Source: Macrostomum hystrix (taxonomy: Eukaryota > Animalia > Platyhelminthes). From it: DNA of 64,000 bases. The stretch is taken from NCBI GenBank assembly GCA_950097015.1, contig CATNEN010000029.1:8370001-8434000 (forward strand). The letters are read 5' to 3'. Below, one piece after another: positions 4,340 through 30,500 of this stretch (position 1 is its first letter; each line of letters begins with the position of its first letter). The position numbers were made by a program, and so were the translations under genes. The notes below the pieces were generated by a model that did not search any database, was not told the origin of the DNA, and saw only the letters and a program-made list of their open reading frames with translations.

Positions 4340-4420
4340 TAGAGCGTCGGATTCACGACTTGAAGGTCCGGGGTTCGACTCCCGAATAACAGATGGATTG
4401 GGTATGTTCTTGGGGGAAAC
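4340..4420 (+). mobile_element. tRNA-derived SINE family 1, head fragment
   Basis: agagcgtcggattcacgacttgaaggtccggggttcgactcc is nearly identical to the head of the copy at 32158-32377 and has a Pol III B-box (GGTTCGACTCC). Confidence 0.7.
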
Positions 4421-4490: not shown

Positions 4491-7400
4491 CTACGATGCA
4501 CCAGGCGTTTCAGCAGCTTCGGCCGCTGCAGCGTCGTCTGGCGCGATGTCAGCGATGCCGTCATTCACTCTGGGCTGCGGCGGCGCACCTTCTTCGTCAT
4601 TATCGTTGTCCTCCTCGGCGTCCTCCGAGGCCATCAGGAACTCGCACAGGGCGGCGCGCAGGCCGACGGGACAACAGTTGCAGACAGAGCGAGCCGTGCG
4701 AATCAGGCGGCCTAGGCGGCCGAGCTGCGCCACGGAGGCGGGCGACATCGATTCGCAGCCGGGATGACAGACGCAGCGGAACGGCTGACGCCAAGATTCC
4801 AGGCGGAGGCGGACACGGTGAGACTGGCGGGTGAGCGATGAAGGCAGGCCTTCATTATTTCAATGCGATAGTCTTACAATCAGAACATTTCTGATTGAAA
4901 ATATAGAAAAGTTTTTCAACGGTTATTTCCGCTTCTTGACTACCCAACAGTGTTTCAATGGTCGCTGCCATCTTCTTGACTACCCAACAGTGTTTCAATG
5001 GTCGCTGCCATCTTCTTGACTACCCAACAGTGTTTCAATGGTCGCTGCCATCTTCTTGACTACCCAACAGTGTTTCAATGGTCACTGCCATCTTCTTGAC
5101 TACCCAACAGTGTTTCAATGGTCGCTGCCATCTTCTTGACTACCCAACAGTGTTTCCATGGTCAATGCCATCTTCTTGACTACCCAACAGTGTTTCAATG
5201 GTCACTGCCATTTTCTTGACTACCCAACAGTGTTTCAATGGTCGCTGCCATCTTCTTGACTACCCAACAGTGTTTCAATGGTCGCTGCCATCTTCTTGAC
5301 TACCCAACAGTGTTTCCATGGTCGCTGCCATCTTCTTGACTACCCAACAGTGTTTCAATGGTCACTGCCATCTTCTTGACTACCCAACAGTGTTTCAATG
5401 GTCACTGCCATCTTCTTGACTACCCAACAGTGTTTCCATGGTCACTGCCATCTACTTGACTACCCAACAGTGTTTCAATGGTCGCTGCCATCTTCTTGAC
5501 TACCCAACAGTGTTTCAATGGTCGCTGCCATCTTCTTGACTACCCGACAGTGTTTCCATGGTCGCTGCCATCTTCTTGACTACCCAACAGTGTTTCAATG
5601 GTCGCTGCCATCTTCTTGACTACCCAACAGTGTTTCCATGGTCGCTGCCATCTTCTTGACTACCCAACAGTGTTTCAATGGTCGCTGCCATCTTCTTGAC
5701 TACCCAACAGTGTTTCAATGGTCAATGCCATCTTCTTGACTACCCAACAGTGTTTCAATGGTCACTGCCATCTTCTTGACTACCCAACAGTGTTTCAATG
5801 GTCACTGCCATCTTCTTGACTACCCAACAGTGTTTCAATGGTCACTGCCATCTTCTTGACTACCCAACAGTGTTTCAATGGTCACTGCCATCTTCTTGAC
5901 TACCCAACAGTGTTTCCATGGTCGCTGCCATCTTCTTGACTACCCAACAGTGTTTCCATGGTCGCTGCCATCTTCTTGACTACCCAACAGTGTTTCAATG
6001 GTCGCTGCCATCTTCTTGACTACCCAACAGTGTTTCCATGGTCGCTGCCATCTTCTTGACTACCCAACAGTGTTTCAATGGTCGCTGCCATCTTCTTGAC
6101 TACCCAACAGTGTTTCAATGGTCAATGCCATCTTCTTGACTACCCAACAGTGTTTCAATGGTCACTGCCATCTTCTTGACTACCCAACAGTGTTTCAATG
6201 GTCACTGCCATCTTCTTGACTACCCAACAGTGTTTCAATGGTCACTGCCATCTTCTTGACTACCCAACAGTGTTTCAATGGTCACTGCCATCTTCTTGAC
6301 TACCCAACAGTGTTTCCATGGTCGCTGCCATCTTCTTGACTACCCAACAGTGTTTCAATGGTCACTGCCATCTTCTTGACTACCCAACAGTGTTTCCATG
6401 GTCACTGCCATCTACTTGACTACCCAACAGTGTTTCAATGGTCGCTGCCATCTTCTTGACTACCCAACAGTGTTTCCATGGTCGCTGCCATCTTCTTGAC
6501 TACCCAACAGTGTTTCAATGGTCACTGCCATCTTCTTGACTACCCAACAGTGTTTCCATGGTCACTGCCATCTTCTTGACTACCCAACAGTGTTTGAATG
6601 GTCGCTGCCATCTTCTTGACTACCCAACAGTGTTTCAATGGTCGCTGCCATCTTCTTGACTACCCAACAGTGTTTCCATGGTCGCTGCCATCTTCTTGAC
6701 TACCCAACAGTGTTTCCATGGTCAATGCCATCTTCTTGACTACCCAACAGTGTTTCCATGGTCAATGCCATCTTCTTGACTACCCAACAGTGTTTCCATG
6801 GTCAATGCCATCTTCTTGACTACCCAACAGTGTTTCCATGGTCGCTGCCATCTTCTTGACTACCCAACAGTGTTTCCATGGTCGCTGCCATCTTCTTGAC
6901 TACCCAACAGTGTTTCAATGGTCGCTGCCATCTTCTTGACTACCCAACAGTGTTTCCATGGTCAATGCCATCTTCTTGACTACCCAACAGTGTTTCCATG
7001 GTCAATGCCATCTTCTTGACTACCCAACAGTGTTTCCATGGTCAATGCCATCTTCTTGACTACCCAACAGTGTTTCCATGGTCGCTGCCATCTTCTTGAC
7101 TACCCAACAGTGTTTCCATGGTCGCTGCCATCTTCTTGACTACCCAACAGTGTTTCAATGGTCGCTGCCATCTTCTTGACTACCCAACAGTGTTTCCATG
7201 GTCAATGCCATCTTCTTGACTACCCAACAGTGTTTCCATGGTCAATGCCATCTTCTTGACTACCCAACAGTGTTTCCATGGTCAATGCCATCTTCTTGAC
7301 TACCCAACAGTGTTTCCATGGTCGCTGCCATCTTCTTGATCCCGCAGTCCGCCATAATGAACACCAACCTGGTGGGAGGAACGCCGGGTGCGCCAGGGCA

Positions 7401-8620
7401 GGATATTGTGGCAGGGGAACACGAACGGCCGCATGTAGCACAAGTCATCCATGCGGCACAATGTAAAGTAGGCCTTCTCAATTGGGCACAGTTCAGCCAG
7501 CTGCCGGGGAGATTTTTCAGCCATAGAGCGCAAAGCGGCCAGAGTGCGGGCGCAGTCGATGGTTCGGTCGAATCGCAGGACGCAGTAGCCCAGGTTGCCG
7601 CGGCCGGTGGATTCGGTGGCGCCAAAGTCTGACGCTGTCGGAGCGAAGACGCTGCGAATCTAAAATTTGAAAGTAAAATAAATTAACTATGAAATCAATG
7701 CGAGCAACCATTTGACGAAGGTACTCGTAGTGGCCTAGCGTTCCTAGATGACATAACTGAAGGGCTAGATTAATAGGCAGATATGGGCGAGGCCATTTTC
7801 AGTCATAAATCAGTCATATATCTGTCATTTTATGGGCCCAAATTCGAACTTCGGACCTTTCAGCTAGGAGTCCGAGGCTCTAACTACTGTGCTACGAGTT
7901 TAACACTGGTAGTGACCAAAATTGAAAGACTCAAAAAGTGACAAAAGCCAACAAACCAACCTGCGAGAAGCGTCCCAGAAACCGCCTAGCAATATCCGCT
8001 GAAGTTAGACTGGCGTGAATATTCCAAACCAGAATAAACTGACACCTGGCCGAGCAGGCGTCAGGCACCGGGCAGAACGGAGCCAGCCCCGGCCTCAGGC
8101 CAGCCAGACGGAGGCTTTCATCGCCCCATTTCTTTAGGCGCAGCTGCGGACTGCCGGGCAGGCTATGGGCCAGCCTCTCTGTGCCAGCCTCGGCCCAGCG
8201 CCTTGACACGGACACTGGCAGGCGTAGTATAGCCAGGCGGCTAGATCCACTGGCGTGCCTAGTCAGGTACAGATTGGCTGTCAGTTTATTGGTGAATGTG
8301 ACCCTAATGGCGTCCAACAGAGCGGCGGCGTCCATTTCGATTGGTAGGCCGAGCAGTCGCCAGCTGCGGAGAGCCGATTGCGGCCGGCACAGGCACCACT
8401 GCACATCGGCCGCATTATTCGATTCAGCAGATTCTGACCGGTCGAAATCCCTATAGTCATGGTCTAGAGCGTTCAATAGTTCAGCGTTATCGTAGCGACT
8501 AACCGGACCGGTCACAGACGAATCCGGCGATGATAGCCAGGCTGCAGTGACCTCAACTGGGACCACTTCTTCGCTAGTCTTTAGTAGGTCGGACAGATGC
8601 CTGCGATGGTATGGGGCCAT
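4491..8620 (-). CDS. RRM + Cys/His-module protein, paralogue A (~427 aa; exons 8620-7961, 7659-7369, 4823-4491)
   Basis: All three exons join in phase 0 with GT-AG sites. The splice reconstitutes an RRM (FILVWNI...RFSQ|IRSVFAP...NLGYCVLRF) and the motif PFVFPCHNILPW...|...PFRCVCHPGC, which aligns with paralogues B and C. Acidic C-terminal tail. Confidence 0.8.
4932..7338. repeat. 40-bp minisatellite, ~60 copies, filling intron 2 of paralogue A
   Basis: Unit tcttcttgactacccaacagtgtttc(a/c)atggtc(gc/ac/aa)tgcca with exact 40-bp phase throughout. Confidence 0.98.
7838..7895 (-). mobile_element. Degenerate tRNA-like SINE head in intron 1 of paralogue A
   Basis: Minus strand gtagcacagtagttagagcctcggactcctagctgaaaggtccgaagttcgaat shows an A-box/B-box layout similar to SINE family 1. 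Confidence 0.55.
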
Positions 8621-8709
8621 TGTGTTTACTTTTGATAGTCGATATTTTTATCTCGATTGTCTATTTAACCCAAGTCAAATATGCGCAGCTTTTGGATTCG
8701 CCCGGCAGC

Positions 8710-8810
8710 TACCATTGGTCACACTGTAGGACGAAATAGCTATCACGTGACAGCGCTGAGCCAATAGCTACCGCTCGTATATGTGCCACATCATAACCAG
8801 CCAATAAAAG
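8710..8810 (-). promoter_or_regulatory. Possible proximal promoter of paralogue A (CCAAT boxes, TCACGTGA E-box)
   Basis: CCAAT/ATTGG at about 8713, 8761 and 8801, and palindromic TCACGTGA at about 8743, 90-190 bp upstream of the ATG. These are short motifs and could occur by chance. Confidence 0.3.
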
Positions 8811-8879
8811 GGCCGCGTGATTCTCATGGTCATCCTTCATTGTTTAATTTGTTCGTAGAAAAGAACAGTCTTGCAATTT

Positions 8880-9150
8880 TTGGGTTTGAGACGCAATATG
8901 CACATCATATGGCACCATTTCGCTGCATCCTGAGCACACGCACACATACTGTACGCAGACACACGCTGACACAAGTGTGTACAAACTGTGCCTTGGAGGT
9001 TGGCCCTCGAGGCCGTAAATTGCACGAAAAACACTAAGCCTTCTCTCCGCGACTGCGCCCTAAATAAATTAAATGTGGCCTCGCCGCGTAGTCGAGATTG
9101 GGGACCTTGGTGCGAGAGGCAAATGCGGTAGACCGCTCCGCCACTCACCA
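8880..9150 (-). mobile_element. tRNA-derived SINE family 2 copy
   Basis: Reverse complement matches the copies at 38282 and 56915 (head ggtgagtggcggagcggt...gcctctcgcaccaaggtccc; body gtacacacttgtgtcagcgtgtgtctgcgtacagtatgtgtgcgtgtgctcagga). Confidence 0.8.
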
Positions 9151-9334
9151 CTAATTAACTAACTAACACCACTAATCTTTAGGGTATTAAGTTACACAGC
9201 AGTAAATTTCATCACCTGTACAAATCTTTATATATTATATTTCCTCCTAAGGCTCCATACAGCAGATCAGTCTGTAAACTGTGGGGGAGGCGGCCGCTAA
9301 AATTTCAACCCCAGTTAGAAATAGAACAGAGGCA

Positions 9335-9410
9335 ATAGGAATCGTTTCCCTGGGACTGAGATTCGAACCCCTGACCTTTGTGTTATATAATTCTAAAGCT
9401 TCAACCGCAG
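9335..9410 (-). mobile_element. Degenerate tRNA-like SINE head fragment
   Basis: Minus strand gcggttgaagctttagaattatataacacaaaggtcaggggttcgaatctcag has a B-box GGTTCGAAT and resembles family 1. Confidence 0.45.
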
Positions 9411-9412
9411 GA

Positions 9413-12278
9413 CTACAAGCAGCGACCAGACCTGAGCGCTTGAACCGAGTCACCAACTACAGGCAGTTCTTGTCGAAGCCGGGTCGCTAACCAGTCGAAC
9501 ATCCCACCAGCCGGCGCCGACGGCACAGCCGCAGGATGGCAGGGGCACATGAACGGCGATCCGGATCCGCAGAAGTCGATCTGGACGTCCAACGGATTCT
9601 CGCTGTGCTGATTGGCGTCAGTTAACCAGGGCAGTAAGTTGTGACAAGGGAATGTGAACATCGGTGTCACCTGCCAGGCCTCCTGACAGGAGTGGATTCA
9701 AACAGTGGCGCGAGCGAACGCGTGTTAAAGAGATTTAGATTGAAGAAAATCCTATTTGCAAGATTTGCAATCCACGAGTAAAGCTTAATTCCAACTATGT
9801 ACTGGCCATCTGGCCGATCGACTTCGTTTAATTATAATTATCACCATTGACCACTTTTTAAGCACCACGATTGACATTTTAGCGTTCCGCTTACCTGCAA
9901 GTGGGCAAAAGTGAATCGCACCAATGACCAGTGGAAGATAGCAACTAGAATTTGACAGGCTGCCGCCTTCAGCACTCCCATAGCGTGCTGACAGTCAGTA
10001 GACTTATCAAATCGGGCAATAAGAAAGCCACAATTGCGATATTGTAAATCGCTGCCGGCAATCGCAGGCGACAATCGTGGACAGTAGAAACTGCGCACCA
10101 TTGGTAAAAATCTATGAGCCCGATGTACAATAGTATTGGGCTCCATATTCAACGGCAGATTCCATATCATCAGGAACACCTGAATGATAAGCAAATGTGT
10201 AAGGCACTTTGGTGAAAAGATTATCGTGGGTTTGTTTCATAAAAAACAGACCCAAACGTAGCCCTTTACCGGTTGAAATTCTGGGCCGGCAGTTGTAATA
10301 AGAGGCAGGAAGCTGCAACCGAAACTGTCGGGCGATCTACTAGCGTAGCCATCGGCTTCAAAAGTCTCCGGGCGCACAATTGTAATCTTCACTGGTCGCT
10401 TTTCGCGATCCAGCAGGTTCTGGCACCGATAGAATTCAATTAAACTAGGGGCGGCCGCCTCGATGGCTTCAACAGTGGCGGCCGGGTCCAAGACGCACAG
10501 TATAACTTTGCCCCATTCGGGCTCAACAGATAGTATAGTATAGGCGGTCAGGATTAGTGGGGACAGGCGGTGAATTGTCAGACAGGCTAGCTGCTCCGAG
10601 TCGGCGCTTAGTCGCAGGCCGACAATACGCAAGTACGGCTGCTGCAGTGGGGTGAGTCGGCATTGATTGATTACTAAACCATTGATTATGCGGCGAGTGT
10701 GGACTAAATAGAATAAGAAACTGTGATGTCAATACAGGCAGAGAATCGGAGTGACAGCAGAGAAGCTGGAGTGCCACTATAGCAACTTGAGTGCCACTAT
10801 AGCAGCTGGAGTGCCACTATAGCAGCTGGAGTGCCACTATAGCAGCTGGAGTGCCACTATAGCAGCTGGAGTGCCACTATAGCAGCTGGAGTGCCACTAT
10901 AGCAGCTGGAGTGCCACTATAGCAGCTGGAGTGCCACTATAGCAGCTGGAGTGCCACTATAGCAGCTGGAGTGCCACTATAGCAGCTGGAGTGCCACTAT
11001 AGCAGCTGGAGTGCCACTATAGCAGCTGGAGTGCCACTATAGCAGCTGGAGTGCCACTATAGCAGCTGGAGTGCCACTATAGCAGCTGGAGTGCCACTAT
11101 AGCAGCTGGAGTGCCACTATAGCAGCTGGAGTGCCATTATAGCAGCTGGAGTGCCACTATAGCAGCTGGAGTGCCATTATAGCAGCTGGAGTGCCATTAT
11201 AGCAGCTGGAGTGCCATTATAGCAGCTGGAGTGCCACTATAGCAGCTGGAGTGCCACTATAGCAGCTGGAGTGCCACTATAGCAGCTGGAGTGCCACTAT
11301 AGCAGCTGGAGTGCCACTATAGCAGCTGGAGTGCCATTATAGCAGCTGGAGTGCCATTATAGCAGCTGGAGTGCCAAAATAGAACTCAGGAGAGACTGGA
11401 ATGCCTGTGGTAAGATGATGAAGCCAATAGAACTGGACAGCTTCGGACAATTGTAAGCCGAATATAAGCTAAATATACGTTTGTTCAGTTGGATTTACCT
11501 GACCAGGAGTCACCTGCCACAGCGGCTGATCTATTGGGATCGACAAGCAAGGCCGCTTACTAAGGACTGTCACCGTATCTTTCTCTGCGTCATCTTCTTT
11601 CTTATTGGTTACTTGATGCTGATTCTGTTGCTTCTGTACAAGTGGGGCGCTTAAAGGCAAAAGCGTTGCCGCGGTCACCGCCCAGAGGTCGTAGGCTCGC
11701 GCCCCGGCCTCGGCTAGACGACCAGCTAGTCGAATCCGATCTGCGCCAGGCGACAACAAGGTCAGAGCGGTCGCCGAAGCGACATTCGCTAGATTCGCTG
11801 TCGGCGGCGGCAGCGGCGCCAAATCGGCAACATCGGCGGATGGCCAACAGTCGGCCAGTCGCATAGCGTCTGGATCGTCCCAAATGGCCAGCAGTAGGCC
11901 GATCTCATCAAGAGCCCCTGCCGGCGGCTGGCTCATTGACTCACCAGTGTGCAGGTAGAGCCGACAGGCGCCAGGACCCAACTCGGCTAAGACAGCCGGC
12001 CATTGTTCGGACTGCAAAGAGTCGAATAGCAGCACAGTATGGCCCCCAAGCTTAGTCGAATATCTCACGTACTGCCTGTAGGTGGTCCCGGTGCTATCTA
12101 CCGGACAACCGTCTTGCAGTAGCACGAAGTCGGATAATATTGTAATAGTATTTTCCTCACTTTCTGGACTGTTATCAGCTTCTTCTGTAAGATTCGAAGA
12201 ATTACCACCGCTTATATCCTCGGTGGACACATTGACAGCGGTCTGATTCTCTTTATTATTGTTTGTGTCTGCCTGCAT
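9413..12278 (-). CDS. RRM + Cys/His-module protein, paralogue B (~568 aa; exons 12278-11499, 10641-10270, 10179-9895, 9682-9413)
   Basis: Four phase-0 GT-AG joins. The spliced junction WQVTPGQ|QPYLRIVG aligns gap-free with WYISSGLETYYVVSG in C. RRM FLMIWNLP...YRNCGFLIARF; motif PMFTFPCHNLLPW...SPFMCPCHP. Confidence 0.8.
10760..11375. repeat. 20-bp minisatellite, ~31 copies, in intron 1 of paralogue B
   Basis: Unit agcagctggagtgcca(c/t)tat. Confidence 0.98.
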
Positions 12279-13338
12279 ACCACGCGTTATCTGTTTGTTC
12301 TTTGAAACCTAAGAATATGTTGGGGCTGCAAATTGAAAAGGTGTGGAATAGTTTAGCAATGATGTTGTTTTTCAACATCGAAACATGAAGCAATTTAAAA
12401 AGCTACCTACTTAGTTTATGCTTAGTATATTTTTTCTCGGAAGACATTCGAGTTTTTGACCCTCTCAACCGTCTTCACAAAAAACTTCTCTGGCCACTTC
12501 TTAGAAAATTAATTGATTTATGAAATAATACAATTGCTCAATTCGACACAGCAGGCTCTACTGTCATTTTAACCAAATCTAACTAATAGACTCTAAAATA
12601 TACTTTACTCTACTCTGTAGTCAGTATAATGTCGTACAAGGCGTACTGTGTAATCTACTTTATTATGCTCTTCTAGTATGCGAAAATAGGAACACAAAGA
12701 CTGCACTTTAACAATATCCTTTTAAGTTCACAAGAGATTAACAAACGCATTTGCTGTCAGTAAAACAAGTTTACTAAAAAATTATGCGCCCATAAAAATT
12801 ATGTTTAATGGTATTAGATTACAATTAACAGCGCATGACAATTCACATTCCAAAAAACTGTTCAAATTTTAATCGCGCATTTGATAGCAAACAGCGGGAA
12901 AAACATGCTGGTACAAAATCGATGAAAAAATGGAACGAATGTTTGTCTTTGAACAACAAAATCGCTAATAAACACCAAGGCAATTCAGAAAACTGCAAAT
13001 TTATTATAAGGTATGCAGCAGAAAGACTGCCAGCTATTATACATTTAAACTAATTTATAGATGTATCTTATTATGATTGTAACACTTTCTGCAATTGAAA
13101 ATGTTGATTTTTATGCTCGTATATATATATATGACTTCTAGATTGCAGATCTAAAATGAATGCTTTAATTTTGAATGGAAATTCTAAAATTTATTTGTTG
13201 GTTTGTTTTCTCTCCGTTTTACTAATGCCAGTTTAGGTGGAAAATTTTTAAGATTGTGTCACAATATAACCGACAAATCAGTCAATAATTAAACTTAGTA
13301 ATGAAACAATGCATAAACCGGGAAAATCATGAAAGAGA

Positions 13339-16300
13339 TCAATAAAAGCTGACATTGTCCAAGTAGGAGCGCAGATTAGCACGCACAGTCTCTACCGGAT
13401 ACGCCGCCCTAGCCTGGTGCAGCAGTTCAGCGAATTGCACAAATCTTTGATAACCCGGAGCGGCCTCTTCGCACACTGGATGGCAGGGACAAGCGAAAGG
13501 CGATTTGTCCATAACACAACGCTGCGTATCGGGATCAACCGAGGCAACCCACGGTATGAGATTGTGACACGGAAAGCTGAACGGCGGCACGTGACAGATT
13601 TCGCGCATATTTGCCGCAATGAAGCGCACTTTAACTAGCCAGGCTTTGTCGTCCGTCAGGTTCTGTGGTTTCTTTTTAACAAGATTTCGCAAATAGTCTC
13701 GGTTGTGAGCGCAACGCTTACAGGCCTCTCTAGGCTCGCACTGGAATCGTATAACGCAGAAGCCGCAGTTCTGATTCGGACGAATCGGATCGCGCGGCAC
13801 GTGAACGCTGCGCATTTTAGGCAAGAGTTCACGCAGGCACTTCATTAGCTGCGAAATGGGCAGGTCGGTTGGCAACTCCCACAGTAACAGAAATGGCGCA
13901 TCTGCTTTGGTTGGCCAAAAGAGAAACCTGTCCGGTAGGCTGGAGGCGTACTCGTGACACGTACCGGTGCTGTATTCGCGGAAGCACAAACTGGCGGCTA
14001 CGGGGTTGAGTTGAGTCTTGCACGTGCGTTGCAAACCTTCTGCTGTTAATGCATGATTCGCAGTGCTAATCGGCATTTTTAGGATCTGCTTTTCGGCTGC
14101 CGCAGTAGCAGTCAATTCTTTAACTTGGACTGGAGCCTCCGTGAACGGCTCGGTTTGCTTTACAACTTTGTTAGGCTCAACCAATCGAACGACAGCTTCT
14201 AGCACAGATTTGACGACATTTTGAACGATTTCTGCTACGTTATCATCAGCTTCCTCTGACAAAAAATCGAAATATGCAATAGGCGCTCGAACTGTGGTGC
14301 TGTCTTTATTGCTTACCCCAACTGACTCTTCCGAAGCTGATGGTGCATTCTCTACGCATTCCAAACCAGTATTAGCGGCTGCTGCATCAAGTGGCTTTGG
14401 CTCAGCCGAACGTTTAGTCTGGTTAATCAATGCTGACTCACAGCCTGTATCATTTACAGAAACGATTGTACTGGTCTCTTCATCTGCAACCGCCTTTAGC
14501 ATTTCTTCTTCTGCTATCGCAACGGCACTACTAATAACATCATGCATTTCAATGACTTCGCTTTCTCGACAGTTATTTTCATCAGTTGCCTTTGCAGCTT
14601 CTAAATAGCCAGTTGCCTCAAATGCGCTGCTTGCAGGAATTCGGTCATCAACTGTATCAAACAACGCTTCAATTGGATCGGATGTTAAATCCTTGTCGCT
14701 TGCATCTGCAATGTTGGCGCCAGATAGACTAGGATCCGCAGTGTTAAACAATTCATCCGCGGTTATCATAGAATCAGCTAGCATGGTTAAATGCTTGGCA
14801 TGCGCAGTTTCATCGATGGAAGCTATATTAGCTTCCGTTGCAGCGACGATGGAAATTGCCTTCTTAGGATTTTCTTCCGCTGTCTCTACAACCCTATCGA
14901 CTCGACTTTCGGTCTCCGCTGAAACAGAAACTTCGTTAGGATTATTTACTTCCACTGCGACCGTCTTAAGATCCTCGCCTGTCTCTTTTGCTAGCTCTGG
15001 ACTTGCGACTTCGGAATCAGTTACTTGAACGGGTTTCAGCTCTTCAGCACGTTGGCTAGGAGCGCCAGTGGATACGTCGGCAACAACCTCTTCATCTTCT
15101 GTTGATTCCGCTTCAGACTCCACTCTAAATTCAGCATCCGTATCTGGCATTCCCTCGATCTCAGAATCTGATGCATCGCAGTCGCCATCTGACTTGACTA
15201 GAAGCTGTTTTTTCAACATAACCTCAATCTCACCTTCTGGTAGCGATCCTTCAAAATTGATTGACGCTTGGTTATTGGAATTAGCTGAGAGTTCACTTGA
15301 AGTCTGCACAGCCATCACGGCAACATTGCGAGCTACTTGTTTCAAATAATCAATAGATAGAGTTTTACCATCCATAGGTGCCAAAACGGCGGCATAAGAG
15401 CCAGTAGATGGGTGCACTGCGACGTAGCAACTACATTGACAGTTTAATAATAAGCTTTCCAGGCGTTCTCCAACCCAAGCGCAGTTAACATCAGCAGGGA
15501 AGCCAGAAACAACGTAATAAGTTTCCAAACCGCTAGAAATGTACCAATTATCGGATCCAGAAGCACCAGTGGAAGCGGCGGGTACAAAAGAACCAATGGC
15601 TGGCTGCTTGTTTAGTGAGTCAGCCTGTTGAAGCATTTTTAGGCCTAACAGGAACAGGTTAGAATCCTTTGCTCGTTTGTTGTCGAATTCATTACGTTGT
15701 CTTTTTCTATCGGGAGACTCTTTGACTGATCGCGACGGCGGCTTAGGCGACAAGCGCGCACCGTTCGGTTCATGGGTCAGAGCAGAAGCTGCAGCAGCGG
15801 CAGCGAAAGCGGATGCTGATGCAGTGGTAGTTCGCTCTGAGTGACGCGAAGAGGACTCAATAACTCGACTTCTAGACGAACTACTCGGTGACTTGGACTT
15901 TCCAGAGTCGCCGTGACGACGATGTCGAGGCGACGTATTTCTTGAACGAGACCGGTTGCCATGACGATGCCGAGAGCTGCTAGTCCTTCGCTCTGAACGA
16001 TCATCATAGCGATCCCGACGGGATTTCGATCTTGATTTTGATCTATAACGATTGCTTGAGAGACGACGGTGCGAATTGCTCCGCGAGCTGGAGCGGCTGG
16101 CCTTTCGCCGATCCGAAGAACTCGGAGACCTAGATTTGTTGCGTAACTGCTGACGAGCACGGCTCGGTGAAGACCGCCCGGAATCAAAGCGGTTCGATCG
16201 GCGACTGCTATCTTCAGGGGGACAGTCCACCCAACGCGATGTAGTTCTGTTCTGCTCTTGAAGCATCTGCTGCTGATGCTGAAGCATCTGCTGCTGCTGT

Positions 16301-17352
16301 TGCAGTCTTAACTGATGCTGGTGCCAAGCAGCAGCCTGCTGTGCTTGTGCCCCGTAGGCGCCGCCATAGGGCATCGACATCGGTACTGGTTGAGGAGGAT
16401 AGTTGAATTGATGCTGGCCAAGCGTTGCCGCAGGGGCAATAACGGCTGATAAAGGCGCTTGCCAATAAGGCGCCATCATGGCGGCTTGCGGCGCGTTGAT
16501 CGGATAAGGCATCGGAAAGTGTGTAGGAAATGCGAAAGGTGCTTGCTGATAGGGCATTTGAGGATAAGGATAATGTTGGTGAGGCTGGCTCATTATCATC
16601 ATCTGAGGTGGCTGTTGCAGCTGAGGTGGCGGGGTGGGCGGTGGCGAATCAAGTGCCTCCGACGGTGCCCATAGTTCGAACACGGAGAAGCCTTCTGGCG
16701 AGGAGCTCAATCGGTTGATAATTTCGAATCGTTCTGCCGAGCCAGTTGCCTCGCTTGGCAGTCTCACAAAGGCGGCCCTAGCATCGCCTAGACGTTCTAC
16801 AATTCGCACATCGCCAATAGGAATTCGTCCGCCCGCGGCAGTGTCAGCCAAGTCCGCCTCTGTTAGCTTGTCGGGCAAATTGTAGAGAAAGACAAAATTT
16901 AAACGACGCTTATCGACTGGCTGGCGACTACCGCCGGTGCCACTCTGAATGTAAACTGGACAGGCGACGCAGCGGGCGGACAAATGACGATAAGTATCTT
17001 CCCACTGGCTGGCGTCCAGCTGATCGAAAAGAGTCACACAACAGCTGCCCGGTAGCTCGGCAGAGTTGCGCACACGCGAGCCCAACGGTTCCAATAGTTC
17101 CCTAAGTTCGCAAGTGATTCGACGCAAGAATACAAAATCTGATTTAACCAGCTCCAGATCATCGGCGCTGCTTCCGGCACCGCCGGATGATGATGCGGCA
17201 GCTGCTGCCGCCGCTGCGGCACCTGGCCGCTTATCTGGCGGCAGCATGCGTTCCTGATGACGCTTGCCAAGCATGTGCACTTCGTAGCCTTCGCGCGTCA
17301 TCATGCCAACAGAGCACAGGTCGCAGTAGAATGGAAAAGAATCGCGATCCAT
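13339..17352 (-). CDS. Intronless ~1337-aa protein, paralogue C: matrin/U1-like C2H2 zinc finger, degenerate RRM-like domains, Q/P-rich and RS-rich regions, acidic linker, C-terminal RRM + Cys/His module
   Basis: 4-kb uninterrupted ORF. FYCDLCSVGMMTREGYEVHMLGKRHQ (Zn finger); RS dipeptide tract; RRM LLLWELP...RSVHVPRD...NCGFCVIRF; motif PFSFPCHNLIPW...SPFACPCHPVC. First ATG at 17352 (the track used TTG at 17358). AATAAA on the minus strand at 13190-13195. Confidence 0.9.
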   Translation of the reverse strand: MDRDSFPFYCDLCSVGMMTREGYEVHMLGKRHQERMLPPDKRPGAAAAAAAAASSSGGAGSSADDLELVKSDFVFLRRITCELRELLEPLGSRVRNSAELPGSCCVTLFDQLDASQWEDTYRHLSARCVACPVYIQSGTGGSRQPVDKRRLNFVFLYNLPDKLTEADLADTAAGGRIPIGDVRIVERLGDARAAFVRLPSEATGSAERFEIINRLSSSPEGFSVFELWAPSEALDSPPPTPPPQLQQPPQMMIMSQPHQHYPYPQMPYQQAPFAFPTHFPMPYPINAPQAAMMAPYWQAPLSAVIAPAATLGQHQFNYPPQPVPMSMPYGGAYGAQAQQAAAWHQHQLRLQQQQQMLQHQQQMLQEQNRTTSRWVDCPPEDSSRRSNRFDSGRSSPSRARQQLRNKSRSPSSSDRRKASRSSSRSNSHRRLSSNRYRSKSRSKSRRDRYDDRSERRTSSSRHRHGNRSRSRNTSPRHRRHGDSGKSKSPSSSSRSRVIESSSRHSERTTTASASAFAAAAAASALTHEPNGARLSPKPPSRSVKESPDRKRQRNEFDNKRAKDSNLFLLGLKMLQQADSLNKQPAIGSFVPAASTGASGSDNWYISSGLETYYVVSGFPADVNCAWVGERLESLLLNCQCSCYVAVHPSTGSYAAVLAPMDGKTLSIDYLKQVARNVAVMAVQTSSELSANSNNQASINFEGSLPEGEIEVMLKKQLLVKSDGDCDASDSEIEGMPDTDAEFRVESEAESTEDEEVVADVSTGAPSQRAEELKPVQVTDSEVASPELAKETGEDLKTVAVEVNNPNEVSVSAETESRVDRVVETAEENPKKAISIVAATEANIASIDETAHAKHLTMLADSMITADELFNTADPSLSGANIADASDKDLTSDPIEALFDTVDDRIPASSAFEATGYLEAAKATDENNCRESEVIEMHDVISSAVAIAEEEMLKAVADEETSTIVSVNDTGCESALINQTKRSAEPKPLDAAAANTGLECVENAPSASEESVGVSNKDSTTVRAPIAYFDFLSEEADDNVAEIVQNVVKSVLEAVVRLVEPNKVVKQTEPFTEAPVQVKELTATAAAEKQILKMPISTANHALTAEGLQRTCKTQLNPVAASLCFREYSTGTCHEYASSLPDRFLFWPTKADAPFLLLWELPTDLPISQLMKCLRELLPKMRSVHVPRDPIRPNQNCGFCVIRFQCEPREACKRCAHNRDYLRNLVKKKPQNLTDDKAWLVKVRFIAANMREICHVPPFSFPCHNLIPWVASVDPDTQRCVMDKSPFACPCHPVCEEAAPGYQRFVQFAELLHQARAAYPVETVRANLRSYLDNVSFY

Positions 17353-17612
17353 GCTCAAAGTGGTTTTTTAAACAAGAAATTCTACTGCGCTGTGGGTTCA
17401 CACAGTTGACTACAGGGCGAGCATTTCGAGTTTTGATGAGTTTAGGTTAGGGATTAAGTTGGATGGTTGCTTTTGCTCTTTTCTAATGGCACCTGTGTTT
17501 AAGTCCTGAAAGTGAAGATGGGTGGCAGCTTGAAGGAGCTAGAGAAAACTTTGTATGATAATTTAAAAAGTATTGCCAACTAATGGCCTTAATTACTAAC
17601 ATCCTAATTGCC

Positions 17613-24586: not shown

Positions 24587-27500
24587 ATGCTCGAAATGCT
24601 CACAGTGCACCTCAGCCTGGCGCAGAACACGGCACCGACATTCAAGCAGTGCAGTGGCTTGAATGCCGCCTACGTGACCGGGGACTGCGGCTCGATACTT
24701 CAGATCAAAGAGGAGGTACCGATTGGTATGTGAATTCCGTATGACTGAGTATAAACACAGGAGGGGAATCTCAGCAAACTGTGGAAATTGTATTATTACC
24801 TGCGAGCTGTTGTAAAGCCACGTAACACACAGCTACCAAAAGTGCCCGTTTAGCAGATGGATCTGAAAGTACACCTGACTCTCTTTCTCACTACAGATAC
24901 GCCTCTGTTTACTGTGGAAGCAGCTGACGCGGAGGGAGACGATGTTGAGTTTACCCTGATGGGGGAAGCAACCCTGTTGTACTTACTGAAGCTCCGGGCG
25001 GACAAGGTCTCTCGAAGCGCTGCCGTTATTGTCAACAGTCGAATCGACAGCGAGGTTTGGGCTGCACTTTTCGCTCTCTTGTTTGATTATATTTTCCTAA
25101 AGCTATGAAATCACTGTTCAATCGGTTCATCGACTTCCACAGAGTCTGAGCAACCCTGTTGCCAACCTTGTTCTGCGGATGAACGATCTGAAAGGCAACG
25201 TGAGTTATTTCCTTGAAGAAAAAATGCAGTTATAGGTGCAAATGACACTTTTTAACACTTATTCTCTCTTTAAAAATGTGTAATCAAATTTAATTTAAGT
25301 TAATCGAGAAGACAATCACTGTGTACATTGTGGATCAAAATGATAATCCACCGGAGCTGCAAAATCTACCTTACCGATGGGAAGTTCCCGAGGTAATGAA
25401 ACTCTTACATGATCTAGTAACATTTTGTATGAGATCACTGCTACATGCAGTTTATTTACTTGTTATTTTTTAATGCAGAGATAACTTTTTCAGCCGTTTT
25501 CATTGCTTCCAGAATACATTGTGGACGTCGCAGACGAGTTTCAATGTCACAGTGCTCGATCGGGACAAGACGCCCAGCAGCTACCGCTTCACCTATGTGG
25601 TATGCTCCGCACTCTGCGTACACTGTGTACTTCTATTGATTTTCTTACTATAAATTACTGAGCCATTCGTATCCCTTAATTTTCAGGTAAACTCGGCGGT
25701 GAGTGGATTGATGAAGCTCAGTTGACGAAGCTTAAGCTTACCTTAAATGCTAGTAATTACTGAGACTACAGAACGCGGGAGCCGAACATGATAAAAATAT
25801 TTGATTTATAACTACGAGTTACAAATGCAGAAAAAGTTAATGAAGTCTGTCAACAGCTGTTTTTGTAGCATTATACGCTCGTATATTTACTTTTATTGGC
25901 CTTCATTTGAACTAATCGTTGAATTGTGGTCACTTTACGGTGACAAAGTATAAAAACAATCGTTATTTTAAATGATTCATTCTCAATCTTTAGTCCACAG
26001 CCTCAACGACAAATCTGTTCAACGAGACCTATCGCGTTACTAGAGGTCTCACTACGGGGACAATGTACCTGAGCACAGTGTCATTAATTCAGCCTCTGGA
26101 TTACGAGAGCAACCGCTTTTATCAGGTGTCCGTCTTTGTGACTGAAGGAATTTTAGGAGGCAAGAACGCATCAACAGATATTGTGGTAAGCGTCCTGGAC
26201 AGACAGGACACTCCACCGGTGTTTGATGGCACGCCTTACTTGGTCTCTGTGACTGAGAACTCACCCGTAGGCACGCTGGTAATGACAGTGCTGGCTAGAG
26301 ACGGTGATCGCGGTGTACCAAATCCAGTGCAATACCTGCTAGACAATAGTTCAGTCCTAGCCGAGCTGTTCGCGTTGAACAGCGCAACCGGTCGACTGGA
26401 GGTCGCCCGCAACATAGATCGTGAGAGCGCCCAGATAGCCGCAGTGTATGCCAGCTTCAGCTTGCAGGTGATCGCCGAAGAAATCTCACCTGACAGTCCG
26501 CAGCCGGCCAACTTGTCGCGCTCGTCGTCACCAGTGCGCATCACCGTTCTAGATGTGAATGACGTGACGCCTAGTTTTGGTCGATCCGAGTACAATGCCA
26601 CTGTTCTAGAAAACACGGCGGCAGGAACGCCAGTAGCTTTACTGACCACTTGCACTGTAACAGATCTGGACGAAGGTGACAATGGCGCCTTTGAATTGTC
26701 AGTAAGCCTTGGTAACGGGAGCGCGTTCGGAGTATTTGACGTTTTGCCCACTAGTGCCATTGGCACCGCAGCTCTGACAGTTCGGGTCAAGGACAGCGCC
26801 GTTTTAGACTACGAAGTAACTAAGAGCATTAAATTTCAGGTGCGCAAGAGAATCCTATATAGCTAATGCTTTTTCAAACTGTTGCGCCACCTTGTTTAAC
26901 TAAGCCTGATATCCCTGCCTTGCGCATTTTGTATGATGCATTTCAGATAGTGGCTAGAGAGTCCAAAACTACAGCGCGGCTGTCGTCGACCGCCACCTTC
27001 ACTGTATTTCTATTGGATGCTAATGACAATGCGCCCAAGTTCAATCTGTCCAAGTACGCGTTCAGCATCTTCGAGAATTCGCAAAATGGCACGTTTGTCG
27101 GTCAGGTCTCGGTAAGATGCTCTTTCGAATCAATTATGACACCAATACTTAAGACTGAGCATGCTTGCGCTTTTAACCCGATTGTAATTTTTACTCATTT
27201 TAGGCTTTTGATCTTGACAGTGGAGATCTCGGAAGAATTGTGTACAGCTTGGGAGGCACTGATGCATACAAGTGAGCAGCTTATGGTTCTAAATAGGCGT
27301 TAGAATACAAAAAATAATGTTTTCTTCCTCGATATAAAGTCGCTTGAACTATTGGCTAGATTTCAGATCAACAGCATCACTGGTCACATCCACGTTGGTG
27401 TCAGAGCCGACGAGGACCTCAGTCTGCTGGACAGAGAGAGGTTCCCTATTCTGTACCTGACTCTCCAGGCTACGGATGGTGGCGGCTTGACCGGCCAGTC

Positions 27501-30500
27501 CCAGCTGGAGATTCAACTACTAGACAAGAATGATCAGAGGCCGTCATTCCAGCGGAGCTTCTACGAAGGAGCTGTGATGGAGAACAGCCTCAGCATGGAG
27601 AGTGTTGTGCAGCTTGTTGTGAGTATCCACAAACCAAAATTGGCATAGAGGAAAGCAAAACAGCCAATGCTGATGTATTAGGCCTTGTATTGGTAGAGCC
27701 TTGATCCCAGTGTCCAATTTCATGTAATGTGTGAACTCTAGTTAATAATTCTAACAACAAAGGCGAATCGGGTCGGGCCGTAGCTTCAATAGATAGGACT
27801 CTCTCCAGAAAGCCTTATCAGAATGGTGATGGTTGAATATTTTTTGAAAATATTTATCTACACTCTAAACTCACTGCAGGCTGTCGACTCGGATCTATTC
27901 CCAAACAATTTCATAACCTACTCATTGCTGCCAAGCAACGCTAGCGTCTATTTTTCCATAGACAACGCAACGGGTATCTTATCTGTCCAGCGACCTCTGG
28001 ACTACGAGGCCCTGCCCATTAAGACCCTGCAACTGCTGGCTGTTGCCGCTGACGGTGGCTCCCCTTCTTTGAGCAGTACAGTGGAGATCCGCATCTCTGT
28101 GGTCGACCAGAATGACATTGTGCCGGAATGCAGTCGGCGGGTTTACAATGGCTCGGTGCCTGAGACAGCCACATACGGCACCCGGGTAACTGAGCTAGCT
28201 GGCAGCGATGGCGACAGTCCGGGTAGTCCGAATTCGCAGGTTTGTGCGGCATTTTTTAGAGCTTCTCAGACGTTGAAACTAGAAATAAAATACAACAAGC
28301 CCTTAGAGGAACAGTTTTGCGTTGAACTTTGCACTATAAAATAATATTATATTTTCTTCAAACGCCAATATCACTCGATTTGATCGTTGGCACATCGGAA
28401 CTCACCCACAAGGTTTTCTTTCGCATTCTTGGAGGCGCTGGCGACCGATTCACGCTGGATGCAAGCGGCACCATCGTTATAGTGGAACGTGGCGCTGACC
28501 TTGACGTTGATAAACTGGGCGTTTTTCACAATATCACCATTGGCATCTACGACCGTGGAACGCCGCAACTCACTGGCGCACCCTGCTATGTGTATATCAA
28601 CGTCACTGACGTAAACAACAAGGCACCCTACTTTGACCCCGTGACCTCTCGAGTCACCGTCTCCGAAGGCGCAGGTGCTTTCGTGCCACTATTCCAGCCC
28701 TCGAAGACTGGTATTGACCCCGACTCGAGTGCCAACCTCACCTACAGTCTGCTTGCCGGCGCCATCACAGGTCGCTCCGCCGGAGGTGCGGCCGTAGCGT
28801 CAACTCCAGCATACAACTTCTCGACACTGTTCAGCATAGATCCTCTGAACGCCACATTGTACACAGTAGCTGCACTAGACCGTGAGATAGCACAGGAGCT
28901 TACCGTGCAAATTCTAGTGCGTGACCTCAACGCTGAGACTCCGATGCCAGTGCAGACTGCGACAGGCACCATTGTACTGACGATAATAGACATCAACAAC
29001 AAGCCCCCACGCTTCCTGTCCACTGGCAGCGCCAACAACTACACTGTTCAAGTGAGAAACCTTTCAGAAATACTGAAGTTGGAAATCATACTTCCAGACT
29101 TTTCTGGTTTCAAAAGTCCCGTTCTTAAAAAAATTCTTTCTCTGACACGAAAGTGACTTCTTTTAGTTTTACGAAATGTTTAGCTTCAGTGTACCAAAAT
29201 ATGTGTTTTTTCGACTACTTTTTCCATTTTTTTCTTGCTTAGGTGTCGGAAGCTTTGGTCCCACCCATACCCATCAACTTGAGGCCGCAAGCTGACGACC
29301 CAGACGTGTCCACGGTCAGCCTAACATACGGCATAGTGCCACCAAGCATTAGCCAGTTTTCTATCGACCCGATCACTGGTCAAGTGTCTCTAGTACAAAG
29401 GCTAGACTACGAAAAGCGCAACAGGCTTGAATTTAACGTTACCGTTAGCGACGGTCTCCACATCACGAGCGCTACCGTTACAATCGACGTCATTAACGCT
29501 AACACCTATGATCCAGTGTTCGATCAGTTCCCAACGCCCCTCAGCTATCCAGAAAATACTCCAATTGGCACTGTTATCGCCACCGTGCACGCCTACGACA
29601 ACGACTCGGGCATCTTTGGTCAGGTAGTTTATAACTTGCTGGCCGGCGACGCCTTCTTCAGCGTTGCGGCCGGTTCAGGACGGGTAACGCTCTCCAGACA
29701 GCTAGATCGTGACGTCTCCAGTGGCGACCAGCAGCTGCTGGTGCTCGAGACAGTTGATAATCCTGGCGGAGTCGACCGACGTCGAGTCAGCCGTCAGATG
29801 GTTGTCAACGTTCTGGATACAAACGACTGTCCGCCAACCTTTCCTAGCAACCTATTCACCTTTCGGAATCTGAAGGAGAACTACCAGGCCGACTTTGACA
29901 TCGACTCTGTGCGTGCCACCGACAAGGACATTGGACGAAACAGCGAGCTTCGCTACGAACTGGTAGCGGCACCCGGACAATCCACCGAGGCACTCCAGCT
30001 CTTTCGAGTTTCAACAGTCAACAACACAGACGGTTACTATGCCCAGCTGAAAGTCAATCAGAGCCTGACGGGCAGGCAGGGCTGGTACAACCTCACCTTG
30101 GTTGCCAGGGACGCTGGCACGCCTCAGCTGACTGGCTCCACTGTGCTCAGCTTCTACATTGCCAAGGCGGATGACTTCACTCTTGTTGACGACGCGGCGC
30201 TGGCTCGCTTCCGCAGCGCTCTCATCGGCACGAATGTAATCCTGATTATTGGCTGCGCCGTGGCCCTGACCTTCATGGTGTGCATGTACTGCAGGTACAA
30301 GCGCCTGTCCCGCCAGGCCGAGCTCGCCATTGTGGCTGGCGAGTCGGACACTCAACAAGTGCGTCTGATGCGGCGAATGCAGCAGCAACAGCAGTCTGAA
30401 ACGGTTTCAGCTGGGGTGGAGACTGCTGCGAAAGACCGCCATACACAAAAGCAGAAAGGTATTGTTTTTTCTGTACACCTGGTGTGGCGATAGCCAGCCC

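What the first reader, a model, noticed from the sequence alone, without database searches (positions are those of the whole stretch)
4491..13640. Conserved PFxFPCHN(L/I)(L/I)PW...PFxCxCHP module: candidate new metal-binding domain
Seen: A has RPFVFPCHNILPW-(19 aa)-QPFRCVCHPGC, B has PMFTFPCHNLLPW-(19 aa)-SPFMCPCHPAA, and C has PPFSFPCHNLIPW-(14 aa)-SPFACPCHPVC, each followed by a likely helix. The C-H and C-x-C-H residues are invariant although flanking identity is low. In A the module is split by a 2.5-kb repeat-filled intron, so ORF-level annotation would miss it. Inference: five potential Zn ligands next to an RRM, possibly a composite RNA-binding or dimerisation unit.
Basis: partly seen in the sequence, partly recalled or inferred. 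Interest (0 to 1): 0.72.

Follow-up and report, generated by a model that had tools for sequence, protein, structure and literature searches.

The report
Flatworm-only Cys/His extension of an RRM
A conserved Cys/His-bearing tail attached to an RNA-binding (RRM) domain is real, matches no described domain or solved structure that I could find, and was found only in Macrostomum flatworms. It occurs three times in what is largely one big spliced gene, and whether it binds zinc is still untested.

Summary
The motif pairs are real. PxFxFPCHN(L/I)(L/I)PW and PFxCxCHP each occur exactly three times in the six-frame translation, always paired and on the minus strand. Chance expects 0.16 and 0.56 per window.

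- **What each pair is.** Each pair is the tail of a divergent RRM. The AlphaFold2 model has mean pLDDT 87, and every top structural match is an RRM.
- **Novelty.** Pfam, NCBIfam, PDB sequence profiles, Foldseek, VIA-align and ESM Atlas all miss the tail.
- **Distribution.** A profile search of 1.84 billion proteins found eight true relatives, all from Macrostomum lignano. The window comes from another Macrostomum.
- **Invariant residues.** Over 13 copies the unit has eight invariant columns: RNP1 Phe, one helix-α2 Cys, Pro, His, Trp and Cys-x-Cys-His. The Cys of PCHN is Ala, Val or Ser in four M. lignano copies, so the "five invariant ligands" reading fails. His plus CxCH remains a plausible four-ligand zinc site.
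- **Gene structure.** RNA contigs confirm the 2,545-nt minisatellite intron that splits module A. They also show B spliced in frame into A, giving one mRNA. C probably joins too, for about 2,300 aa with a U1/matrin-like finger, an RS region and three RRM-CH units.

Zinc binding and side-chain geometry could not be tested. I class it as a new variant of a known kind, of moderate interest.

The parts
13339..17352 (-). Part C: a 1,337-aa ORF from the ATG at 17352. It has an N-terminal U1/matrin-like C2H2 finger, RRM-like domains, an RS-rich region, an acidic region and the first RRM-CH unit. If it is spliced on to B, the exon would end at 13354 (LDN|).
   Evidence: (zf-C2H2_jaz E 0.0077, below the Pfam cut-off)
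13609..13911 (-). RRM core of unit C (residues 1150-1250 of the ORF as listed).
   Evidence: AlphaFold2 pLDDT 92-97 over the core; VIA Z 9.2 to the SYNCRIP RRM; Foldseek E 4e-4
13471..13608 (-). Cys/His module of unit C, ICHVPPFSFPCHNLIPW...SPFACPCHP. It is predicted as short strands plus a knuckle-like coil.
   Evidence: 40/46 identical to M. lignano
13354..13470 (-). Two C-terminal helices of unit C.
   Evidence: H154-170, H173-187; 31/39 identical
11499..12278 (-). B exon 1. The ATG is at 12278, and a candidate acceptor for a C-to-B splice lies at 12273|12272.
   Evidence: the RNA loose end at 10644 continues at 11502
10270..10641 (-). B exon 2 (RRM-like domain, YLRIVGL...).
   Evidence: RNA contigs and the joint 10177/10268
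9895..10179 (-). B exon 3: RRM core of unit B.
9432..9682 (-). B exon 4: the Cys/His module of unit B. RNA shows the exon starts at 9682, which adds EAWQ. It ends at the donor 9432|9431, so the stop at 9413 is spliced out.
   Evidence: joints 9681/9894 and 8599/9431 in all four runs
8601..9431 (-). Intron joining B to A (831 nt, GT..AG, in frame: ...SVQALR|HLSDLLKTS...).
   Evidence: four runs; the joined sequence completes the second helix pattern of the family
7961..8600 (-). Exon carrying an RRM-like domain and strand beta1/helix alpha1 of unit A. The ATG at 8620 is not used in the spliced form.
7369..7659 (-). Exon with the rest of RRM A and the first half of its module (PFVFPCHNILPW).
   Evidence: joint 7659/7961 in four runs
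4824..7368 (-). Intron splitting module A. It holds a 40-bp x 60.2 minisatellite at 4932-7339.
4491..4823 (-). Last exon: the second half of module A (QPFRCVCHP), the helices, an acidic tail and the stop codon.

Best explanation
The motif pairs mark a roughly 190-residue composite 'RRM-CH' unit. The unit is a divergent RRM, nearest to the Mei2 type, whose chain continues into about 45 residues carrying P-x-H-[ND]-x3-W, a variable loop of 15-35 residues and [FY]-x-C-x-C-H-P. Two helices follow. The unit was found only in Macrostomum, in SR-like multi-RRM proteins, and it repeats within proteins. B and A here are one mRNA (shown). C very probably belongs to the same gene (inferred). That would give a protein of about 2,300 aa with an N-terminal U1/matrin-like C2H2 finger, an RS region and three RRM-CH units. 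My inferred mechanism is as follows. The invariant His and the C-x-C(-H) knuckle form one structural Zn(II) site. The fourth ligand would be H144, the nearby variable Cys or the invariant helix-alpha2 Cys. This site closes the variable loop and fixes the extension and its helices onto the RRM. The result would be an enlarged, rigid RNA-binding unit in a nuclear RNA-processing protein.
For: - Motifs are real and non-random.
- The RRM fold is predicted with high confidence, and the module itself has pLDDT 81-96 once 15 sequences are used. Only RRMs appear among the structural matches.
- Of the 8 fully invariant columns in 13 copies, 6 lie in the module and 5 are Cys/His.
- The loop between the two halves varies in length while the halves stay fixed, as in two-knuckle zinc sites.
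- In protein C the module is the most conserved segment between species, 87% against 55% for the RRM core and 32% for the acidic region.
- Three of the four copies that lack the PCHN Cys have a Cys within a few residues (NWC, NWCC, HNC).
- No known family matches.
- All relatives are from M. lignano.
- The B-to-A splice is seen in four RNA runs and completes the helix pattern.
- The RS-rich region and the weak matrin/JAZ-type finger fit an RNA-processing protein.
Against: - No metal test was possible, and no model coordinates were available, so clustering of the Cys/His side chains is unverified.
- C143 and H144 are adjacent, as are C115 and H116. Adjacent residues rarely bind the same ion, so the ligand set is uncertain.
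- The invariant alpha2 Cys aligns with the conserved buried Ala of canonical RRMs and may be a core residue only.
- The RNP1 and RNP2 aromatics are partly lost, so canonical RNA binding is not assured.
- The first AlphaFold2 run, with 7 sequences, gave pLDDT below 50 for the module. The good model therefore rests on a shallow alignment of 15 rows.
- The C-to-B junction was not checked with reads.
- The RNA runs are of undeclared kind. I infer they are RNA because introns are missing from their contigs.
Confidence: 0.5

Rival explanations
1. The module is a metal-free, lineage-specific C-terminal extension of the RRM. In this reading the invariant His, Asn, Trp and Cys residues pack on the domain or contact RNA directly, as extensions do in U1A, PTB, Mei2 RRM3 or the xRRM, and no zinc is involved.
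For: - The model shows extra short strands straight after beta4 (E105-108, 111-114, 122-125, 132-134), as expected for an extension of the sheet.
- Pro, Trp, Asn and Phe are conserved as strongly as Cys and His.
- The first Cys is dispensable.
- Adjacent C-H pairs are awkward ligands for one ion.
- Mei2 RRM3 gives the longest structural alignment, 110 residues reaching model residue 153.
Against: - Absolute invariance of C-x-C-H and His across paralogues that are only 15-35% identical to the C unit is unusual for packing residues.
- The variable loop between two fixed halves fits a clasp.
- A replacement Cys appears nearby when the PCHN Cys is lost.
Confidence: 0.3
2. The module with its two helices is chiefly a protein-protein or intramolecular docking element. 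It would pair the three units, or pair each unit with the preceding RRM-like domain. Zinc may or may not be present, and the degenerate RRM would act like a UHM-type protein binder rather than an RNA binder.
For: - RNP2 position 2 is L/M and RNP1 position 5 is V/I instead of aromatic.
- Every unit is preceded by another RRM-like domain, and units come in twos or threes per protein.
- Amphipathic helices follow each module.
Against: - RNP1 position 3 stays aromatic (F/Y).
- The conserved R-F of RNP1 is kept.
- No UHM hallmark (the R-x-F loop) was identified.
- No interaction data exist.
Confidence: 0.15
3. The Cys/His residues form a catalytic centre, for example a Cys-His dyad or a metal-dependent nuclease or deaminase-like site that acts on bound RNA.
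For: Only the invariance of the His, Asn and Cys residues.
Against: - There is no similarity to any enzyme family in sequence or fold.
- The module is small, about 45 residues.
- It repeats three times in one protein, which is more typical of binding modules.
Confidence: 0.04

Closest known systems
Mei2-type RRM (Pfam RRM_2, PF04059; S. pombe Mei2 RRM3, PDB 6YYL / 7DUS)
   Same: - The only non-family protein that reached significance in 1.84 billion was a 5 x RRM_2 protein (P0009, E 2.3e-6, RRM part only).
- It shares a similar NCG[FY]xVxRF RNP1 region.
- Mei2 RRM3 gives the longest structural overlay (110 residues, Z 6.5).
- UniProt names the M. lignano B orthologue 'RRM_2 domain-containing'.
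   Different: - Pfam RRM_2 does not hit any member at E <= 1.
- hhalign gives only 55% probability, over beta1-beta3 alone.
- Mei2 has no PxHNxxxW...CxCH module.
RRM-plus-zinc-finger composites: RBM5/RBM10 RRM1-RanBP2 ZnF (PDB 7PCV), U2AF1 ZnF-UHM-ZnF, CPEB RRM2-ZZ
   Same: The concept is the same: a small Cys/His module directly follows or flanks an RRM and works with it as one RNA-binding unit. This rests on general knowledge of those families.
   Different: - The ligand patterns differ: W-x-C-x2-C...C-x2-C for RanBP2, CCCH for U2AF1, and ZZ for CPEB.
- No sequence match was found.
- 7PCV aligns over the RRM only. Foldseek reports 138 columns but at rmsd 11.6.
SWIM-type C-x-C-x(n)-C-x-H zinc sites
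   Same: They contain a C-x-C knuckle plus a His and a variable spacer. This shows from general knowledge that C-x-C can bind one Zn.
   Different: The order and spacing differ: here it is H...C-x-C-H. No Pfam SWIM hit was found and the context is different. The resemblance is of pattern only.

Membership tests
RRM fold | beta-alpha-beta-beta-alpha-beta sandwich | tested here: met
   AlphaFold2 gives E7-11, H19-29, E33-37, E51-56, H60-80, E96-100 with pLDDT 92-97 over the core. VIA gives Z 9.2 (6KOR). All top rows are RRMs.
RRM_1 (PF00076) by sequence | Pfam gathering score reached | tested here: not met
   No hit for A, B, C or most M. lignano members. The best is P0005 at E 0.28, 11.5 bits against a cut-off of 20.7.
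Canonical RNA-binding RRM | Aromatic residues at RNP2 position 2 and RNP1 positions 3 and 5 | tested here: not met
   RNP2 reads F-L-[LM]-[IL]-W-[NE]-L-P, with position 2 L/M. RNP1 reads N-C-G-[FY]-x-[VI]-x-R-F, with position 3 aromatic but position 5 V/I.
Mei2-type RRM_2 (PF04059) | Significant profile match to RRM_2 domains | tested here: inconclusive
   The family profile hits the 5 x RRM_2 protein P0009 at E 2.3e-6. Against that, hhalign gives 55% probability and Pfam RRM_2 gives no hit.
Any described zinc-finger or metal-binding domain | Match to a Pfam or NCBIfam model, or to a solved structure, over the module | tested here: not met
   Pfam and NCBIfam give nothing. The PDB profile gives only chance hits at E 1.4 and 4.9. 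Atlas features score 0.76. The module could not be folded alone for its own fold search.
   H116, C141, C143 and H144 are invariant in 13 of 13 copies, as is C67 in helix alpha2. C115 is present in only 9 of 13.
   Model coordinates are not exposed (one search shows only FASTA files in /data). No wet assay is available.
U1/matrin-type C2H2 finger (zf-met / zf-C2H2_jaz) at the N-terminus of C | Pfam gathering score reached | tested here: inconclusive
   16.8 bits against a 22.6 cut-off in C. 19.3 bits in the paralogue P0002. The C-x2-C...H-x5-H pattern is visible in FYCDLC...HMLGKRH.

The most novel reading that the evidence does not exclude
The PxHNxxxW...CxCH segment is a previously undescribed zinc-binding mini-fold that arose in the Macrostomum lineage on a Mei2-like RRM. 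With that RRM it forms a new composite RNA-recognition unit, repeated three times in one SR-like giant protein. It would be a datable, lineage-specific birth of a metal-binding RNA-binding module.
Probability: 0.4. Interest if true: 0.6.

Novelty: new variant of a known kind. Interest (0 to 1): 0.45.

Why it matters
RRMs are among the commonest RNA-binding domains, and much of their specificity comes from extensions. This extension has a strict His/Cys-x-Cys-His signature, no detectable relative outside one flatworm genus, and a confident predicted fold. It is therefore a compact case of recent domain invention on an old scaffold. Macrostomum lignano is a tractable model with RNAi, transgenesis and in situ hybridisation, so the function of the family could be tested directly. 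The gene also illustrates an annotation problem. Public models of it are fragments or chimeras with retroelements. The true mRNA skips an apparent stop codon and an apparent start codon and crosses minisatellite-filled introns.

Tried and rejected
- **Family scans.** Pfam on all ORFs, exons and M. lignano relatives gave nothing over the unit. NCBIfam on the module gave nothing.
- **PDB profile searches.** The whole unit gave only SRSF2 RRM at E 2. The module alone gave chance hits to TRPM3 and Rop.
- **Atlas feature searches.** The unit gave RRM leads below 0.9. The module gave 0.76, which is noise.
- **Structure prediction and fold searches.** The first AlphaFold2 run, with 7 rows, left the module unmodelled. 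Foldseek, VIA-align and Atlas fold searches on the good model return RRMs only and cover model residues 1-133.
- **Mei2 comparison.** hhalign against Mei2 repeats was weak and did not reach the extension.
- **Genomic orthologues.** The search for longer or NCBI-annotated M. lignano orthologues returned only P0001 itself. I therefore could not compare intron positions or synteny in M. lignano.
- **Other checks.** tRNA and Rfam scans of the window were empty. Literature searches for Macrostomum with RRM and zinc, or with Mei2, gave nothing relevant.
- **Readings rejected.** A chance motif is rejected. Three independent genes are rejected for B and A. I judged heme CP or CxxCH-like motifs unlikely because the CP dipeptide is not conserved and the spacing is wrong.
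Full report
**Observation**

The minus strand of 4491-17358 carries three copies of a two-part motif.
- A has PFVFPCHNILPW at 7428-7393 and PFRCVCHP at 4784-4761.
- B has PMFTFPCHNLLPW at 9664-9626 and PFMCPCHP at 9556-9533.
- C has PFSFPCHNLIPW at 13584-13549 and PFACPCHP at 13500-13477.

Across all six frames of the 64-kb window, the patterns P.H[ND]...W and [PF].C.CH hit only these places. Block-shuffled sequence gives 0.16 and 0.56 hits.

**Gene structure**

All introns I inferred are GT..AG and phase-consistent. Four public runs hold this locus as contigs 95-100% alike. I take them to be RNA because introns are missing from their contigs, although their kind is not on record. These contigs show the following.
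- Intron 7960..7660 is confirmed.
- The donor at 7369 is confirmed. Its loose end continues with 24 letters identical to window 4823-4800. The 2,545-nt intron that splits module A, with its 40-bp x 60 minisatellite, is therefore real.
- The RNA allele reads GACGAG (Asp-Glu) where the window has CACCAG (His-Gln) at 7374-7369.
- B intron 10269..10180 is confirmed.
- B intron 3 is 9894..9683, so exon 4 starts at 9682 and adds EAWQ.
- Unexpectedly, a joint from 9432 to 8600 removes B's stop codon (9413) and A's ATG (8620) and keeps the frame (...SVQALR|HLSDLLKTS...). All four runs show it.

The sequence created by that last joint fits the family's second-helix pattern (compare VRANLRSYL in C and LRAALCEFL in A). 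B and A are thus one mRNA of about 983 codons.

C probably belongs to the same gene. A GT follows ...SYLDN at 13354, and an AG precedes ADTNNN at 12272. The M. lignano model P0001 reads ...SYLDSADESDS in exact register. The whole protein would be about 2,300 aa. One small contig in run X4 (8589-8747) runs unspliced across the acceptor, so an A-only or intron-retaining form may also exist.

**What the unit is**

With a 15-row alignment (A3), AlphaFold2 models C residues 1150-1339 at mean pLDDT 87 and pTM 0.76.
- The core is a canonical beta-alpha-beta-beta-alpha-beta fold, at residues 7-100 of the unit.
- Short strands and a turn follow at 105-134 and carry ICHV, FSFP, CHNL.
- A coil carries PFACPCHP, with pLDDT 81-89.
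- Two helices close the unit at 154-170 and 173-187.

VIA-align against 48,161 chains gives RRMs only. SYNCRIP scores Z 9.2, and Mei2 RRM3 gives the longest overlay at 110 residues. Foldseek against PDB and the ESM Atlas fold search also return RRMs only, and their matches cover only about half of the model.

Nothing matches the module by sequence. Pfam found nothing. NCBIfam found nothing. PDB profile searches found nothing meaningful. Atlas features scored at noise level. I could not fold or search the module alone.

**Distribution**

A profile of the unit was run against 1.84 billion representative proteins. It found ten hits at E <= 0.001.
- Eight are true family members, and all are from Macrostomum lignano: P0001 to P0008.
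- P0009 is a 5 x RRM_2 Mei2-like protein that matches the RRM part only (E 2.3e-6).
- P0010 is a spurious repeat protein.

The window's own proteins are 50-87% identical to their M. lignano orthologues by region. The window therefore comes from another Macrostomum species, in agreement with earlier notes on this genome. Paralogues P0002 and P0007 each carry two units. P0002 also has the N-terminal C2H2 finger and an RS region, and it is intronless. Public models of the orthologues are fragments or chimeras with retroelement ORFs.

**Conserved residues**

Every family member has one P.H[ND]...W followed 27-40 residues later by C.CH. Over 13 copies the unit has eight fully invariant columns: F56 (RNP1), C67 (helix alpha2), P114, H116, W121, C141, C143 and H144.

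The Cys of PCHN is not invariant. It is Ala in P0005, Val in P0006 and P0008, and Ser in P0007 copy 1. Three of those four copies have a Cys close by (NWC, NWCC, HNC). P0005 and P0006 are close paralogues, so this amounts to at most two independent events.

The alpha2 Cys aligns with the buried Ala of canonical RRMs, so it may be a core residue rather than a ligand.

In protein C the module is the most conserved segment between the two species. It is 87% identical, against 79% for the helices, 55% for the RRM core and 32% for the acidic region.

**Interpretation**

The unit is shown to be real, RRM-based, repeated, expressed and spliced, restricted to one genus in the databases searched, and unmatched by any described family.

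The rest is inferred. His116 and the C141-x-C143(-H144) knuckle would form one structural zinc site that clasps the variable loop and fixes the extension to the RRM. The protein's RS region and U1/matrin-like finger point to nuclear RNA processing.

Several points count against this, or remain open.
- Side-chain geometry could not be inspected.
- The adjacent C-H pairs make the exact ligand set uncertain.
- The RNP aromatics are partly lost.
- A metal-free extension (rival 1) or a docking role (rival 2) fits most of the data as well.

**Comparison with known families**

The RRM is closest to the Mei2 type, but it does not meet Pfam RRM_2, and hhalign gives only 55% probability. Functionally the nearest analogues are RRM-plus-zinc-finger composites such as RBM5 RRM1-ZnF, U2AF1 and CPEB, but neither pattern nor fold is shared. 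I therefore file it as a new variant of a known kind: an RRM with a novel, lineage-specific Cys/His extension.

**Rule followed**

Noticed in passing
window 8985-9027: A 43-nt stretch inside the B-to-A intron has very high word depth in the RNA contigs (476 in X1, 240 in X3). Several short contigs carry unrelated loose ends on both sides. It is probably a piece of an abundant or repeated transcript.
   Followed up: no
window 4340-4385, 7840-7885, 9340-9390 (minus strand): tRNA-like B-box fragments (GGTTCGAA...) lie downstream of or within introns next to each module. ARAGORN and Rfam find no gene there, so they may be SINE relics.
   Followed up: partly
window 8589-8747: One contig of run X4 runs unspliced across the acceptor at 8600. 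This could be intron retention or a separate A-only mRNA that uses the ATG at 8620.
   Followed up: no
window 7369-7374: RNA contigs read GACGAG (Asp-Glu) where the window has CACCAG (His-Gln), just before the splice donor. This is an allele or strain difference within the module's variable loop.
   Followed up: partly
window 10764-11376 and 4932-7339: Both large introns of the gene are filled by near-perfect minisatellites: 20 bp x 30.6 at 98% matches, and 40 bp x 60.2 at 97% matches. The window holds many more, including ORF-like arrays at about 35.7-36.3, 39.2-40, 42.5-46.9, 48.7-50.1, 53-54.5 and 59.2-61 kb.
   Followed up: no
window 26063-30493 (+): A run of ORFs with cadherin-repeat hallmarks (DVNDVTPSF, DQNDIVPE, DINNKPPRF, DTNDCPPTF) and a transmembrane tail. 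It looks like a multi-exon cadherin gene.
   Followed up: no
L001 9392-12610 (M. lignano NIVC01003369.1): Paralogue P0002 is encoded without introns, unlike the intron-rich gene in the window. It has a zinc finger, an RS region and two RRM-CH units.
   Followed up: partly
P0001, P0018 (M. lignano UniProt models): Public gene models of family members are chimeras with retroelement gag-pol or RNase H ORFs, or they are truncated at splice sites. UniProt names such as 'CCHC-type', 'FZ domain' and 'FIST domain' are misleading.
   Followed up: partly
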